From IMG/VR virus record IMGVR_UViG_3300027899_000001, positions 341,017-405,016 of that record: a DNA stretch of 64,000 nt. One strand, 5' to 3'. Made by a program: the position numbers and the translations under genes. Below, one piece after another: positions 11,886 through 15,265 of this stretch. Numbering within the stretch: the stretch's first letter is position 1; each line of letters starts with the position of its first letter. The notes under the pieces are model-generated. The model had not been told where the DNA came from, did not search any database, and saw only the letters and a list, made by a program, of their open reading frames with translations.

Positions 11886-12293
11886 TTATTTTCTATCGCC
11901 TTTTAATTTCTGATCTATATCTAAAGGATTTCCAGTATCATGTTGCATACCTTTACCTTGATAAATTGAAAATTCTGCATCTTCACATTGACTAACATAA
12001 CTCATCCAATATCCCCAGTCTGAATATGCATCTGTTTCCCATATTTCAATATCTCCTGCATGAACAGTATAAGTTGTATGCATTCCAATTCCAAGTGTAC
12101 GTTCACCAAGAAAGTCTTCTACTCTATAGTCATAAACATCTACAATTATAGCTCCTGGAAAATCATTGTAAATAGTAATTGTACCTGTATGATTTTCTTC
12201 ACATGGTTCTTTATCTCCACAAGAAAAAATTCCAATAATAGCAATCATAAATAATGATGCTATAAATAATTTAAAAAAGTTTGATCGTTTCAT
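11886..12293 (-). CDS. Putative lipoprotein
   Basis: Signal peptide with lipobox IFSC followed by acidic residues. Confidence 0.7.
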   Translation of the reverse strand: MKRSNFFKLFIASLFMIAIIGIFSCGDKEPCEENHTGTITIYNDFPGAIIVDVYDYRVEDFLGERTLGIGMHTTYTVHAGDIEIWETDAYSDWGYWMSYVSQCEDAEFSIYQGKGMQHDTGNPLDIDQKLKGDRK

Positions 12294-12312
12294 TTGTTAT
12301 CATATTTAATTA

Positions 12313-12813
12313 TTAATAATTTTTGAATAAAGGAATTCCTAATGTTAATTCACCTGTCCATACTCCAGTATATTCATTCCATCCATATCCTATTCCTGCT
12401 TTAAAATATACTCTATTACCGTTATATTTTGAACCTACCATAACTATAGTTACTGGCTCTGTTCCTCCATAACCATAACTATCTTCATATTGATAACCAT
12501 CAGATGCTACACCCACTGATAAATAAAAAGTATAAATATCAGTTGGAGGTCCACTATATAAAGAAGCAGCAAATCCAAAAGAATTTATATTTTCTCCAGT
12601 CATAGGCATTGTAGTTGGCATCCAACCTCCTGTTAGTCCAAATAATCCTGATTGAAAGTCTGCGCCAACCACTCCATCAAGCCAAGAATATCCTCCGTGA
12701 ATACTTAAAGCATATGGTGTATGAGTTGTTAAATCATTTGTTTGTTGCGCATTTAATGTTGATGAAATGAATACAGACATCATCAAGCAAAAAACAAAAA
12801 GAAATTTTTTCAT
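12313..12813 (-). CDS. Putative outer-membrane beta-barrel protein
   Basis: Cleavable signal peptide (..LNA/QQ), alternating Gly/aromatic beta strands, C-terminal LTLGIPLF. Confidence 0.65.
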   Translation of the reverse strand: MKKFLFVFCLMMSVFISSTLNAQQTNDLTTHTPYALSIHGGYSWLDGVVGADFQSGLFGLTGGWMPTTMPMTGENINSFGFAASLYSGPPTDIYTFYLSVGVASDGYQYEDSYGYGGTEPVTIVMVGSKYNGNRVYFKAGIGYGWNEYTGVWTGELTLGIPLFKNY

Positions 12814-12910
12814 GTGTATAAATGTTTAGTTAATAAAAAATTTATATTTATATATATGTTAAAAGTTTTATATTTTGATGTAAACAAAATGATATTTGAT
12901 GTAAAATTTG

Positions 12911-12983
12911 TCCCTCTAGAGAGATTCGAACTCTCGACACGCGGGATTAGAAGCCGCTGGTCTGACCACTGACCTATAGAGGG
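12911..12983 (-). tRNA. tRNA with anticodon CUA (amber suppressor)
   Basis: 73-nt canonical cloverleaf CCCUCUA UA GGUC AGUGGUCA GACC A GCGGC UUCUAAU CCCGC GUGUC GAGAG UUCGAAU CUCUC UAGAGGG A; standard numbering puts CUA at 34-36; C31:C39 mismatch. Confidence 0.8.
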
Positions 12984-13011
12984 TAAAAGAGGGCATTTAA
13001 CCCTCATTGTT

Positions 13012-13338
13012 TTATTCTTTTTTTGTATGAAATTCTATACATTTATTTATTGCGTTTGGATATTGATTAAGAGGGTGATTTTCTTCAGGGTAATGATTTT
13101 CAATCTGTGAGAATTTTTTTCCTCTCATTAATCCATATGCTGCATATTTAATTCTTAATTCTAATCCGCCTACGTAAGATTTCCATGCGGCGTCTTTAGG
13201 TTCTATAATTCTTTCACCTTTTAAATGAACAGTCTTTCTTTGATTTTTCATAGCTCTTTGTAATGCTGCGCTTTGTTTAATATCTTTTTTTAAAGATTCG
13301 ATTGCGACTTTATCGATTGTTTTTTCTATTGTTTCCAT
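13012..13338 (-). CDS. Hypothetical protein in amber module
   Basis: 108 aa, YAAYGLMRGKKFSQIE segment; lies between the amber leader peptide and the CUA tRNA. Confidence 0.8.
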   Translation of the reverse strand: METIEKTIDKVAIESLKKDIKQSAALQRAMKNQRKTVHLKGERIIEPKDAAWKSYVGGLELRIKYAAYGLMRGKKFSQIENHYPEENHPLNQYPNAINKCIEFHTKKE

Positions 13339-13417
13339 AATGATTATTTTATTTTAGTTATTAAATTAATTGATCAAGGACATAATGTCTTTGAGATTGT
13401 CTTCGATAACCTAATCA

Positions 13418-13444
13418 TTAGGGAGATCTAATCTAGTGTGTCAT
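13418..13444 (-). promoter_or_regulatory. Putative leader peptide M-T-H-(TAG)-I-R-S-P-stop
   Basis: ATG ACA CAC TAG ATT AGA TCT CCC TAA TGA with A-rich start context (ttaaaactATG). Confidence 0.55.
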
Positions 13445-13507
13445 AGTTTTAAGTTTTAATTTAGTTTAAATCTAATAAAAATTTTTGATATAATTTTATT
13501 GTATATA

Positions 13508-13858
13508 TTAAAGTTTTGTTAATGTTTCTTCTTTTAAAGCTAATGGTAAATTGGATGTTAATTTATGAGATCTTTCTCCAGGTTCAATAGCGATCGCAGT
13601 TAATTGATTTCCAATATCTGGTTCAAGAAACGTTGTATACTTTAAATCGTAAAATTTAATTTTTTCTAAAAGGTGTTTAAGTTGTTGTTCATTTTCAACA
13701 GATAAGAATATCAAATACTTAGAATTAGTATTCCATTCCTTTGCGATTTCTGGATGTTCATGTTGAAATTCAATTGCAGCATGTGCGGCTTGAACTGCCT
13801 GATAACCCGGAGTTAAATCTCTACGGGTAATAACAATTAATTTGTGTATCTATTTCAT
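13508..13858 (-). CDS. pth2: Peptidyl-tRNA hydrolase type 2-like protein with in-frame TAG at codon 3
   Basis: MK*IHKLIVITRRDLTPGYQAVQAAHAAIEF...W...LIFLSVENEQQL...FLEPDIGNQLTAIAIEP...SNLPLA; the ORF track caught only the last 68 aa. Confidence 0.8.
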
Positions 13859-13859
13859 T

Positions 13860-13937
13860 TTATTTACTATTTTTTTTATAACTTACATAAAGTATAAGTA
13901 ATACTACTATTGATATAATTATGATAATTGTTCCCAT
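13860..13937 (-). CDS. 25-aa single-pass membrane peptide
   Basis: MGTIIIIISIVVLLILYVSYKKNSK; stop 1 nt before the pth2 ATG. Confidence 0.45.
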   Translation of the reverse strand: MGTIIIIISIVVLLILYVSYKKNSK

Positions 13938-13951
13938 ATTTTATTATATAT

Positions 13952-14065
13952 TTAAATTGAAAAAAGTTTCATAATTAATATAACTAACATAATTCCTATC
14001 ATACTCCAAAAAACTACTTTATAGGAATAAGATTTGTCTCTATTGTAATAATCTTCACTTTTCAT
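13952..14065 (-). CDS. 37-aa membrane peptide
   Basis: MKSEDYYNRDKSYSYKVVFWSMIGIMLVILIMKLFSI; ATGA overlap with upstream gene. Confidence 0.5.
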   Translation of the reverse strand: MKSEDYYNRDKSYSYKVVFWSMIGIMLVILIMKLFSI

Positions 14066-14379
14066 TTGTATTCTTCTCCAGATATATCTACTAGTGCTTT
14101 AGGAATAAAAATTTCATCTTGTCCTTCATACCATTCATTTGGCCAATTATCAATATCTAATATTGGTCTTTTAAATGCTTTTTTAATTTCTTTTCTAACC
14201 CATTTTAAATCTTTAATAGAAGTATGTTCAACCATTAAACTCTTATCTGAATAACTTGTTGGAACATCGTTTTTATCATAATAAACTTCTGATATGGAAA
14301 AATATCTTTCTTTTCCTTTTGCATATCTTCCAGTTATTACTCTAAAATTCCAATGATGTTGAGGTTTATATTTTTTCAT
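14062..14379 (-). CDS. Hypothetical phage protein
   Basis: WNFRV...FSISEVYYD...KAFKRPIL pattern. Confidence 0.7.
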   Translation of the reverse strand: MKKYKPQHHWNFRVITGRYAKGKERYFSISEVYYDKNDVPTSYSDKSLMVEHTSIKDLKWVRKEIKKAFKRPILDIDNWPNEWYEGQDEIFIPKALVDISGEEYK

Positions 14380-14402
14380 GATGTTGAGGTTTATATTTTT
14401 TC
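14353..14402. repeat. 25-bp perfect tandem duplication
   Basis: atgatgttgaggtttatattttttc x2, spanning the start of the 14062..14379 gene. Confidence 0.9.
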
Positions 14403-14403
14403 A

Positions 14404-14580
14404 TTAAAAATCATCTTCTAAATAATATACAAAATCATAAATATCTGCTACCATAGTTTCTTGTAAACATACATCGCAAGTATCTTCCCAAAATGATGCT
14501 ACACCTGCTAAAGTTTTGCCTTGTTTTTTAGCGCACTTTTCGCAAATTTGGACAATCATTTTTCTATCATTCTTTGACAT
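14404..14580 (-). CDS. Small Cys-rich hypothetical protein
   Basis: CEKC...CDVC; start reassigned to MSKNDRK. Confidence 0.55.
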   Translation of the reverse strand: MSKNDRKMIVQICEKCAKKQGKTLAGVASFWEDTCDVCLQETMVADIYDFVYYLEDDF

Positions 14581-14851
14581 CTTCTTCCTTTTTGACATCT
14601 TCTTCTTTTTTAGTATTTTCAATTATTTTTGGTCCTCTTCCTGTCATAACACCAAGAACTATTACCGCAACGATATCTAAAAATACTGTTAATCCTTGTA
14701 CATCATTAATTGTACCTCCGGCAGATCCTACACTAAGTCCAATTAAAAAACCCACAAATAATGCAGCGCCTAAAGGAATTAAAGCATACCATCTCCAACC
14801 TTTACGCCAAGCTAAAATAGTTAGAACTATTTGAAGAATAAATAAAATCAT
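14567..14851 (-). CDS. Small membrane protein
   Basis: Three hydrophobic segments, KKEEDV repeated tail. Confidence 0.7.
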   Translation of the reverse strand: MILFILQIVLTILAWRKGWRWYALIPLGAALFVGFLIGLSVGSAGGTINDVQGLTVFLDIVAVIVLGVMTGRGPKIIENTKKEEDVKKEEDVKE

Positions 14852-14884
14852 AATTTTATTTTATTAAATGAATACTAAAAATTG

Positions 14885-14966
14885 TGGCCAAAAAGGGACT
14901 CGAACCCTTACGTCTTTCAACACATGCTTTTGAGGCATACGCGTCTACCAATTTCGCCATCTGGCC
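14885..14966 (-). tRNA. tRNA-Leu(CAA)
   Basis: GGCCAGA/UUUGGCC acceptor, loop CUCAAAA, long variable arm, A73. Confidence 0.9.
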
Positions 14967-15265
14967 AGGCTAGCCTCCGCCGATCTTTCATCAGTTTCTT
15001 TTGTTAAACCTTTTCTCCAATTTCTTTTTCCTACAAATCCGTCTATAGCTGGTTTTCCTTCTCTATGAATTAAACAGTGTAAAAAATGTGAATTTAAACT
15101 TTGATGATTATTGAATTCTTTTTCACATTCGCATCTATATAAATTTTCATTAATTTTATATTTTGATGGTTGTTTTTCTTTTTTAACATAGATTTTACAA
15201 AAAGTTTTATGCCCATTTATTCCTTGAGAACTTTCAAATTCTCTTCCACATTCACACTTATACAT
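14945..15265 (-). pseudogene. Truncated zinc-finger endonuclease remnant
   Basis: Two YKCECG.EF...HC repeats and WRKGLTKETDER, no nuclease domain; frame runs into tRNA-Leu. Confidence 0.6.

What the first reader, a model, noticed from the sequence alone, without database searches (positions are those of the whole stretch)
13405..13444. Leader peptide MTH*IRSP with arrest-like C-terminus and mutually exclusive hairpins
Seen: only after amber readthrough does the ribosome make I-R-S-P-stop. CUAAU spanning the TAA can pair either upstream with AUUAG (inside the leader) or downstream with AUUAGG. Established: R-x-P-P/RAGP motifs and Pro-stop endings stall ribosomes (SecM, ApdA, TnaC). Inference: readthrough-dependent stalling remodels the RNA and controls the 108-aa ORF and suppressor tRNA, and the stalled peptidyl-tRNA would be a Pth substrate. 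The stems are short (5 bp), so the structural part is weak.
Basis: partly seen in the sequence, partly recalled or inferred. Interest (0 to 1): 0.72.

Follow-up and report, generated by a model that had tools for sequence, protein, structure and literature searches.

The report
Leader peptide that senses amber suppression
A tiny upstream reading frame in a 405-kb freshwater phage has a stop codon built into it that matches the phage's own suppressor tRNA, and it appears to switch on the next gene only when that tRNA reads the stop codon, which would make it a natural sensor of stop-codon suppression.

Summary
The micro-ORF is real. On the minus strand it reads ATG 13444, TAG 13435-13433, Arg-Ser-Pro, TAA 13420-13418. 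In this genome alone it is no more than chance: 1 hit against about 0.5 expected.

Comparison with relatives changes the picture. Of 69 distinct upstream regions of homologues of the 108-aa gene, 63 carry the same in-frame design: M-K-x-x-STOP-x-x-x-[R/K]-x-P-STOP.
- The eight out-of-frame control arrangements give 0 or 1 hit each.
- Arg, Ser and Pro codons vary synonymously.
- The internal stop is TAG wherever the linked suppressor tRNA is CUA (38 loci).
- It is TAA in the only two loci with a UUA tRNA, and these are two independent switches.

A covarying 12-bp helix instead pairs the last Pro codon, the terminal stop and the next 6 nt with the start codon of the 108-aa gene.

Best reading: readthrough of the internal stop carries the ribosome to an arrest-like R-x-P-stop, where it covers the helix arm and frees the start codon.

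The neighbouring PTH2-like gene carries the same internal stop at codon 3. Stalling and the switch itself are inferred, not shown. The function of the 108-aa protein is unknown. I found no prior description.

The parts
13508..13858 (-). PTH2-like hydrolase gene. It starts ATG AAA TAG (TAG at 13852-13850), then I-H-K-L-I-V-I-T-R-R-D-L.
   Evidence: Pfam PF01981, E = 1.3e-9, matching from residue 1 of the piece after the TAG. NCBIfam Pth2, 8.8e-8. The internal stop near the start (codon 3 in most) is present in about 30 relatives, and is TAA in the two UUA-tRNA loci.
13418..13444 (-). Leader ORF M-T-H-TAG-I-R-S-P-TAA
   Evidence: Sequence. The same in-frame design occurs in 63 of 69 distinct upstream regions of homologues. 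Out-of-frame controls give 0-1 hit.
13433..13435 (-). Internal ('sensor') amber codon of the leader
   Evidence: TAG in 61 leaders and TAA in 2. The codon matches the linked tRNA anticodon in 40 of 40 loci, Fisher p = 0.0013. The tree indicates two independent switches.
13421..13429 (-). Arg-Ser-Pro codons, an arrest-like C-terminus directly before the stop
   Evidence: Arg codons AGA 41, CGA 12, CGC 3, AGG 1. Final Pro uses all four codons. The penultimate residue is Pro, Ser (both codon families), Gly or Ala. Lys replaces Arg in 5 loci.
13412..13423 (-). 5' arm of the long-range helix (CCC UAA UGAUUA): last Pro codon, terminal stop and the next 6 nt
   Evidence: MFE fold of the window. Register table with compensatory changes. 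Cognate versus non-cognate duplex energies.
13374..13394 (-). Hairpin inside the loop between the two arms (9-bp imperfect stem)
   Evidence: A similar hairpin is present in L026. Its role is unknown.
13335..13346 (-). 3' arm of the helix (UAAUCAUUAUGG). It contains the AUG (13338-13336) and the G at +4 of the 108-aa gene.
   Evidence: In relatives the AUG is fully paired in the MFE fold of 50 of 62 regions.
13012..13338 (-). 108-aa gene, the regulated cargo, of unknown function
   Evidence: More than 900 relatives, all labelled hypothetical; the longest contigs that hold them are 250-405 kb. AF2 model pLDDT 92, all-helical, with no significant fold or family match.
12910..12983 (-). Amber suppressor tRNA (anticodon CUA)
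   Evidence: ARAGORN. Rfam tRNA, 59.8 bits.

Best explanation
This is a translational switch that reports whether the phage's suppressor tRNA is decoding its stop codon.

The mRNA between the PTH2-like gene and the 108-aa gene carries an 8-13-codon leader ORF. By default, a 12-bp helix pairs the last Pro codon, the terminal stop and the next 6 nt of the leader with the start codon region of the 108-aa gene (-8 to +4), so that gene is not translated.

Without suppression, ribosomes end at the internal TAG. In most relatives this lies 15 nt upstream of the helix, too far for the ribosome to open it.

When the suppressor tRNA outcompetes RF1 at the TAG, the ribosome continues to [R/K]-x-P-stop. 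With Pro-tRNA in the P site and the stop in the A site, its mRNA channel covers the whole 5' arm. Slow termination at this arrest-like ending keeps the start codon of the 108-aa gene open for initiation.

The PTH2-like gene is gated more simply, by the same stop codon at codon 3.

Shown here: the conserved in-frame ORF, peptide-level conservation of R-x-P, the match between internal stop and anticodon, and the covarying helix.

Inferred: the stalling, the ON polarity, and any role of the hydrolase in clearing short peptidyl-tRNAs.
For: (1) Conservation. 57 strict and 6 relaxed leaders among 69 distinct upstream regions. One more is cut by a contig end, one region is too short to judge, and four lack a leader and have a homing endonuclease gene in its place.

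(2) Reading frame. 57 in-frame hits against 0-1 in each of eight out-of-frame controls. No leader lacks the internal stop.

(3) Peptide-level selection. Arg is encoded by AGA, CGA, CGC and AGG. Ser uses both codon families. Pro uses all four codons. Lys substitutes for Arg in some loci.

(4) Internal stop versus anticodon. 38 TAG/CUA, 2 TAA/UUA, 0 discordant, p = 0.0013. L008 and L099 are not sisters on the protein tree; starred branches force two changes. Their tRNAs resemble different CUA tRNAs, and in both loci the PTH2-like gene also switched to TAA.

(5) Helix energies. Cognate arm pairs average -14.6 kcal/mol, non-cognate pairs -9.8 and shuffled arms -4.8. None of 10,000 permutations reaches the cognate mean.

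(6) Helix extent. Twelve register positions are 85-100% paired, with AU/UA/GC/GU alternation at positions 7, 8, 10 and 11 and a UGA/UCA swap. Pairing drops to 23-38% beyond position 11.

(7) Full-length folds. The helix appears in the MFE fold of 61 of 62 distinct regions and of the window.

(8) Geometry. Spacing from the internal stop to the helix is 15 nt in 43 leaders, 12 in 6, 18 in 6 and 9 in 2.

(9) Stop context. The base after the internal stop is a purine in 54 of 57 leaders, against 19 of 40 TAGs that end long ORFs in this genome, p = 1e-7.

(10) Ribosome-binding site. A canonical AAGGAG lies 6 nt before the leader ATG in one clade.

(11) Precedents.
- RAPP-like arrest motifs include RGSP and RAP-stop (PMC10987492).
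- An Arg near the C-terminus blocks the release factor in the AMD1 readthrough-stall (PMC13025110).
- Poly-Pro C-termini are the worst context for termination (PMC6412442).
Against: - There are no experimental data. No RNA run holding this sequence was listed, so co-transcription of leader and gene is assumed.
- Most RAPP-like sequences in ordinary proteins do not stall (PMC10987492), and peptides of 8-13 residues are too short to reach the mid-tunnel.
- In the window the internal stop is only 9 nt from the helix, so a ribosome terminating at the TAG might already fray it.
- In L065 the terminal stop is also TAG, and in L008 it is TAA like the internal one.
- The permutation test ignores relatedness among the sequences.
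- A promoter inside the 60-180-nt loop would bypass the switch.
- The genome is not TAG-recoded, so what the suppressor is for, and why the 108-aa protein should depend on it, is unexplained.
Confidence: 0.7

Rival explanations
1. Same switch, but without a true arrest. Any ribosome that reads through the TAG melts the helix in passing, as in translational coupling by unfolding. The R-x-P ending only slows termination slightly, or is kept for another reason such as dependence on EF-P.
For: The helix and internal-stop evidence is the same. Most RAPP-like motifs do not stall on their own (PMC10987492). The peptide is very short.
Against: [R/K]-x-P directly before the stop is conserved at the amino-acid level across 63 leaders, with synonymous codon turnover. 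That is hard to explain if dwell time were irrelevant.
Confidence: 0.15
2. Opposite or different polarity. Readthrough and stalling lower expression of the 108-aa gene (for example through cleavage of the stalled mRNA), or the helix serves RNA processing or stability. The gene is then normally translated from a transcript that starts inside the loop.
For: There is no transcript map. The loop is long, highly structured and rich in palindromes that could be protein-binding sites or promoters.
Against: The helix buries the AUG itself in 50 of 62 folds. Its 5' arm coincides with the stretch of mRNA a terminating ribosome would hold. This is the classic arrangement of an ON switch.
Confidence: 0.08
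3. RNA-only element. The conserved block is a structured RNA or protein-binding site, the short M-K-x-x-stop ORF is all that is translated, and the apparent I-x-I-R-P-P coding is incidental.
For: Part of the block (CCN UAA ...) is constrained by base pairing.
Against: The Arg codon and the penultimate codon lie outside the helix. They change between codon families (AGA/CGA/CGC; AGY/TCN) while keeping the amino acid. The frame from ATG through the internal stop to the terminal stop is kept in 57 loci, against 0-1 in frame-shifted controls. The internal stop follows the tRNA anticodon.
Confidence: 0.04
4. Chance micro-ORF in AT-rich intergenic DNA, with the local 5-bp hairpins proposed by the first reader.
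For: About 0.5 such ORFs are expected per genome by chance. The local fold has z = +0.53.
Against: The ORF is conserved at the same position across proteins only 45-79% identical. The local hairpins are absent in relatives.
Confidence: 0.01

Closest known systems
Leader-peptide translational attenuation (ermC/ermB, cat and cmlA leaders; secM-secA). From own knowledge.
   Same: A short upstream ORF, a ribosome held at a defined codon, and an RNA helix hiding the downstream start site that the held ribosome disrupts.
   Different: The input is neither an antibiotic nor secretion force. It is decoding of an in-frame stop codon by a phage suppressor tRNA. The helix is long-range (a 60-180-nt loop) and pairs the leader's own stop codon with the AUG.
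RAPP-like arrest peptides (SecM RAGP, ApdA/ApdP RAPP, ApcA RAPG, RQH family; PMC10987492)
   Same: Arg two residues before the P-site residue, followed by Pro. Variants seen here (RPP, RGP, RSP, RAP-stop, RGSP) overlap motifs listed in that paper (RGSP, RAP*, RGPP, RPPP).
   Different: The A site holds a stop codon, not a Pro codon. There is no signal or transmembrane segment and no sec/yidC context. The peptide is only 8-13 residues and phage-encoded. Stalling is untested.
AMD1 C-tail readthrough-stall (PMC13025110)
   Same: [quoted passage not shown] An Arg close to the C-terminus blocks the release factor.
   Different: AMD1 is eukaryotic. Its readthrough is spontaneous rather than tRNA-programmed, its tail needs a tunnel clamp and is far longer (the second stop is 384 nt downstream), and it acts on its own mRNA without a helix switch.
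Termination-arrest leaders TnaC and PepNL (PMC11890864; TnaC from own knowledge)
   Same: A leader peptide that stalls at its stop codon with peptidyl-tRNA in the P site (Pro-tRNA in TnaC). PepNL links arrest to stop-codon readthrough.
   Different: In PepNL readthrough cancels the arrest. Here readthrough of an earlier stop is needed to reach the arrest site. TnaC acts on Rho termination, not on a helix over the start site.
Engineered amber codon in a leader peptide (the unnatural-amino-acid 'transcriptional switch', PMC6412442 section 6)
   Same: A TAG placed in a leader peptide makes expression of the downstream gene depend on amber suppression.
   Different: That switch is synthetic and acts through transcription termination. 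This one is natural, conserved and acts on translation initiation.
prfB (RF2) autoregulation and lambda bar minigenes. From own knowledge; minigenes also in PMC2490762.
   Same: prfB uses an early in-frame stop codon as a gauge of termination efficiency. ATG-NNN-stop minigenes load Pth with short peptidyl-tRNAs.
   Different: prfB escapes by a +1 frameshift inside one gene. No toxicity or drop-off has been shown here.

Membership tests
Leader-peptide translational attenuator (erm / secM type) | Short translated ORF upstream of the regulated gene on the same strand | tested here: met
   The in-frame ATG, internal stop, R-x-P and terminal stop are conserved in 63 of 69 regions. Frame-shifted controls give 0-1 hit. 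A Shine-Dalgarno sequence precedes the leader in one clade.
Leader-peptide translational attenuator (erm / secM type) | RNA helix that sequesters the downstream translation start | tested here: met
   A 12-bp helix covers the AUG. Compensatory changes occur at 4 or more positions. Cognate pairs are more stable than non-cognate pairs. The helix is present in 61 of 62 MFE folds.
Leader-peptide translational attenuator (erm / secM type) | The stall site places the ribosome on one arm of that helix | tested here: met
   By geometry only. The helix arm begins at the last sense codon (P site) and runs 12 nt, while the internal stop lies 15 nt upstream in 43 of 57 leaders.
Leader-peptide translational attenuator (erm / secM type) | Demonstrated ribosome stalling and induction | not testable with these tools
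   This needs toeprinting or reporter assays. No RNA run holding the sequence was listed.
RAPP-like arrest peptides (SecM/ApdA/RQH) | C-terminal R-[AG]-[PG]-P motif, with arrest before the last Pro codon | tested here: not met
   The motif is [R/K]-[PSGA]-P followed by a stop codon, not a Pro codon. It is related in form only.
RAPP-like arrest peptides (SecM/ApdA/RQH) | Located upstream of secA, secDF or yidC, with an N-terminal export signal | tested here: not met
   The downstream gene is a 108-aa helical protein with no family match. The leader has 8-13 residues and no hydrophobic segment.
Stop-codon-recoded phage (code 15 type) | Suppressor tRNA gene present | tested here: met
   tRNA with CUA anticodon at 12983-12910.
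Stop-codon-recoded phage (code 15 type) | In-frame TAG in many genes, and much better coding density when TAG is read as sense | tested here: not met
   Reading TAG as sense adds only 23 frames of 150 codons or more and 4% more codons. TAG ends 40 of 415 long frames (some of them off-frame artefacts of repeat genes). TAG near a start codon is found in only 2-3 credible genes. Relatives' loci show no excess of internal TAG over the TGA control.
PTH2 peptidyl-tRNA hydrolase (neighbouring gene) | Sequence match to the family above the curated cut-off | tested here: inconclusive
   Pfam PF01981 scores 38.7 bits against a cut-off of 23. NCBIfam Pth2 scores 32 bits against a cut-off of 126. The best PHROG match has no annotated function. 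Catalytic residues were not checked.

The most novel reading that the evidence does not exclude
Huge freshwater phages carry a self-monitoring nonsense-suppression module made of a suppressor tRNA, a PTH2-like hydrolase, a leader and a 108-aa protein. A leader peptide with a built-in stop codon measures, in real time, how well the phage's own suppressor tRNA competes with the host release factor. It turns this into translation of a dedicated protein through a readthrough-then-arrest mechanism. The internal stop co-evolves with the anticodon. This would be the first natural sensor of suppressor-tRNA activity. It would also mark the 108-aa family and the hydrolase as unknown players in managing stop-codon readthrough in phages that still use the standard code.
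Probability: 0.6. Interest if true: 0.9.

Novelty: new variant of a known kind. Interest (0 to 1): 0.85.

Why it matters
Phage suppressor tRNAs and stop-codon recoding are widely reported, but how a phage senses or controls the level of suppression is unknown. This element offers a testable answer. It is compact (about 110 nt in this window), has a clear logic and a built-in evolutionary control, since TAG goes with CUA and TAA with UUA.

It would add a new input, tRNA-mediated readthrough, to the family of arrest-peptide switches. It would be a prokaryotic counterpart to the AMD1 readthrough-stall. It would also be the natural version of amber-codon leader switches that synthetic biologists built by design.

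It flags two protein families as linked to suppression: the 108-aa helical protein, with more than 900 members and no annotation, and a divergent PTH2-like hydrolase. Finally, it raises the question of what a suppressor tRNA is for in a phage that keeps the standard code.

Tried and rejected
- **Local hairpins.** The 56-nt fold has z = +0.53. The hairpins are not conserved. Rejected.
- **Rfam.** Only the tRNAs matched in 12000-15000.
- **Promoter and terminator scan.** Promoter-like sites are at background level. One terminator-like hit is the loop hairpin, read on the other strand.
- **Genome-wide search for further leaders of this type.** None besides this one.
- **Gating by TAG near the start codon as a general feature of the genome.** Only the PTH2-like gene is clear, with one radical-SAM candidate.
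- **Function of the 108-aa protein.** Pfam, PHROGs, NCBIfam, a PDB profile search, Foldseek against PDB and AFDB clusters, and the ESM Atlas gave nothing significant.
- **Complex of the PTH2-like protein with the 108-aa protein.** The tool returned 'no answer', which is evidence neither way.
- **RNA-seq support.** One DNA run of a freshwater metagenome holds the region. No RNA run was listed.
- **Amino-acid identity of the suppressor tRNA.** There is no close paralogue among the genome's 39 tRNAs. Left open.
- **Genome collection scan.** Only two hits, both on contigs labelled as metagenome-assembled bacterial genomes; one is the 362-kb contig also held in the viral collection, so these are probably mis-binned phage.
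- **Literature.** Six searches found no description of this element.
- **Not done.** I did not run the count of structure pairs or build a covariance model, because the variable 60-180-nt loop makes a single alignment unreliable. The register table was used instead.

Full report
**What is in the window.** Genes in this region run on the minus strand. In the direction of transcription the order is as follows:
- a PTH2-like gene, 13858-13508
- a 169-nt spacer
- a 108-aa ORF, 13338-13012
- a short hairpin
- a tRNA with anticodon CUA, 12983-12910

The window is the last 64 kb of a single 405,016-bp contig with 28.8% GC and 39 tRNA genes. The one public run that holds it is a freshwater metagenome.

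**Chance and the local hairpins.** The ORF pattern occurs once in the 405-kb genome. Shuffled genomes give 0-2 hits, about 0.5 on average. Alone, it proves nothing.

- The downstream one would leave a 1-nt loop, so it cannot form.
- The 56-nt segment folds no better than shuffles (z = +0.53).
- In relatives the pentamer complement is present in only 3 and 5 of 62 regions, and no leader region has a significant local fold.

**Conservation of the leader.** Homologues of the 108-aa protein were used to fetch 108 loci from viral and metagenome collections. The family has more than 900 members. All are labelled hypothetical, and the longest contigs that hold them are 250-405 kb.

Of 69 distinct upstream regions:
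- 57 contain ATG, 1-8 codons, a stop, 1-6 codons, Arg-x-Pro, stop, all in one frame
- six more have Lys-Pro-Pro or Arg-Gly-Ser-Pro
- one leader is cut by the contig end
- one region is too short to judge
- four lack a leader and have a NUMOD4/HNH homing endonuclease gene directly upstream instead

The consensus is M-K-[D/H]-[T/K/L]-TAG-[I/V/M]-x-[I/T]-R-P-P-TAA.

Eight control patterns, with the ATG or the R-x-P block shifted out of frame, give 0 or 1 hit against 57. No leader lacks the internal stop.

The codons show selection on the peptide:
- Arg is AGA 41, CGA 12, CGC 3, AGG 1.
- The final Pro uses all four codons.
- The penultimate residue is Pro, Ser (AGY and TCN), Gly or Ala.
- Lys replaces Arg in five loci.

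One clade has AAGGAG 6 nt before the leader ATG.

**The internal stop follows the tRNA.** The internal stop is TAG in 61 leaders and TAA in two (L008, L099). Among the 40 loci where a suppressor tRNA lies within the fetched DNA, those two are exactly the ones whose tRNA has anticodon UUA rather than CUA (Fisher p = 0.0013).

On a tree of the 108-aa proteins the two are far apart. Well-supported branches force two changes, and 0% of bootstrap trees unite them. Their tRNAs resemble different CUA tRNAs. This is good evidence that the internal stop is decoded by the linked tRNA.

The base after the internal stop is a purine in 54 of 57 leaders, against 19 of 40 for TAGs that end long ORFs in this genome. 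The first base after UAG is known to affect RF1 recognition (PMC6412442). Here, selection for an Ile or Val codon cannot be separated from selection on that base.

**The real RNA structure.** Folding 186 nt of the window pairs CCCUAAUGAUUA (13423-13412) with UAAUCAUUAUGG (13346-13335), and the second stretch contains the AUG of the 108-aa gene (z = -2.4).

Across relatives:
- The leader's 3' end and its own start region form a duplex of -14.6 kcal/mol on average. Non-cognate pairs give -9.8 and shuffled arms -4.8. None of 10,000 permutations reaches the cognate mean.
- In the commonest register (34 unique arm pairs), twelve consecutive positions are 85-100% paired, starting at the first C of the last Pro codon. 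Positions 7, 8, 10 and 11 alternate between AU, UA, GC and GU.
- A UGA terminal stop is matched by UCA before the AUG.
- Beyond position 11, pairing falls to 23-38%.
- Other clades keep the pairing in a shifted register. For example, GUUUCCAUUU just after the stop pairs with AAAUGGAAAC.
- The helix appears in the MFE fold of 61 of 62 full-length regions, and the AUG is fully paired in 50.

**How it most likely works.** The 5' arm runs from the last sense codon through the stop and 6 nt beyond. From general knowledge of ribosome footprints, this is the stretch of mRNA that a ribosome holds when Pro-tRNA is in the P site and the stop is in the A site.

The internal stop lies 15 nt upstream of the arm in 43 of 57 leaders, 12 nt in 6, 18 nt in 6 and 9 nt in 2, including this window. 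A ribosome that terminates there should therefore leave the helix closed.

Only readthrough brings a ribosome onto the arm. An ending that terminates slowly would keep the start codon of the 108-aa gene exposed.

The [R/K]-x-P-stop ending fits known arrest chemistry:
- RAPP-like motifs have Arg two residues before the P-site residue, and listed variants include RGSP and RAP-stop (PMC10987492).
- In the AMD1 readthrough-stall, an Arg close to the C-terminus blocks the release factor's GGQ loop (PMC13025110).
- Poly-Pro C-termini are the poorest termination context in E. coli (PMC6412442).

The stalling, the ON polarity and co-transcription are inferences. No RNA run holding this sequence was listed.

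**The neighbouring hydrolase.** The PTH2-like gene begins ATG AAA TAG (13858-13850). Homology to PTH2 starts right after the TAG. In about 30 relatives it likewise begins M-K-TAG-[V/I]-K-L-V-T-V-T-R, sometimes after a longer N-terminal peptide. In L008 and L099 it begins M-T-TAA.

Two adjacent genes are therefore tied to the same tRNA, one directly and one through the leader. Whether the hydrolase clears short peptidyl-tRNAs from the leader or from ATG-AAA-TAG, in the manner of minigenes (PMC2490762), is speculation.

**What remains unexplained.**
- The genome is not recoded. Reading TAG as sense adds little, and TAG ends 40 of 415 long frames, some of them off-frame artefacts of repeat genes. 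The relatives' loci show no excess of internal TAG over a TGA control. The suppressor's known clients are therefore essentially its own module, plus possibly a radical-SAM gene.
- The 108-aa protein folds confidently as a helical protein (pLDDT 92) but matches nothing.
- A predicted complex with the hydrolase gave no answer.

**Comparison with what is known, and verdict.** In architecture this is a leader-peptide translational attenuator with an arrest-like ending. The new features are:
- the input, which is decoding of a built-in stop by a phage suppressor tRNA
- the readthrough-then-arrest order
- the pairing of the leader's own stop codon with the downstream AUG

The closest natural analogue in concept is AMD1. 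The closest engineered one is an amber codon placed in a leader peptide (PMC6412442). Six literature searches found no description of this element.

The proposed hairpins and the control of the tRNA are not supported.

Noticed in passing
window 13858-13508 (-), TAG at 13852-13850: The PTH2-like gene itself starts ATG AAA TAG. An in-frame stop near the start (codon 3 in most) is present in about 30 relatives, and is TAA in the two loci with a UUA tRNA.
   Followed up: yes
window 2649-2323 (-), TAG at 2640-2638: A radical-SAM-like gene begins M-N-I-TAG-T-I-S-I-V-V-P-T-K-S-C-V-N-K-C-P-F-C. The Pfam Radical_SAM match starts at profile position 1, five residues after the TAG. This may be a third gene that depends on the suppressor. 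The following ORF (2176-1745) could be its continuation.
   Followed up: partly
L004:2151-2924 (also L014/L015, L017-L019, L027, L040; L021-L023): Relatives without a leader have a NUMOD4/HNH_3 homing endonuclease gene directly upstream of the 108-aa gene. In L021-L023 this gene runs in frame into the leader, so its stop codon is the leader's internal TAG.
   Followed up: partly
window 13394-13374 (-); loops of L003, L007, L008, L013, L016, L020 and others: The 60-180-nt loop between the helix arms is strongly structured. In many relatives it is filled with short palindromes such as TTCGCAA-N-TTGCGAA and CGTTACGCAA..TTGCGTAACG. These could be stabilising hairpins or protein-binding sites.
   Followed up: no
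whole genome (G000), tRNAs between 313179 and 361128: All 39 tRNA genes lie within a 48-kb span. The genome keeps the standard code (TAG ends 40 of 415 long frames, some off-frame artefacts) yet carries an amber suppressor. It is unclear what the suppressor serves beyond its own module.
   Followed up: partly
L064, L065, L074, L092: One clade has a canonical AAGGAG 6 nt before the leader ATG, K-P-P instead of R-P-P, no Shine-Dalgarno sequence before the 108-aa gene, and a helix shifted to just after the leader's stop. In L065 the terminal stop is also TAG.
   Followed up: partly
window 13005-12989 (-): A GAGGG-N7-CCCUC hairpin followed by UUUU lies between the stop of the 108-aa gene and the first base of the suppressor tRNA. 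It could be a weak terminator or a processing signal.
   Followed up: no
leaders in general: The codon after the leader's terminal stop is very often a second stop (TGA, TAA or TAG). This is partly forced by pairing with AUUAUUAUGG, but it may also back up termination, notably in the UUA-tRNA loci (TAA-TAA and TAG-TAA).
   Followed up: no
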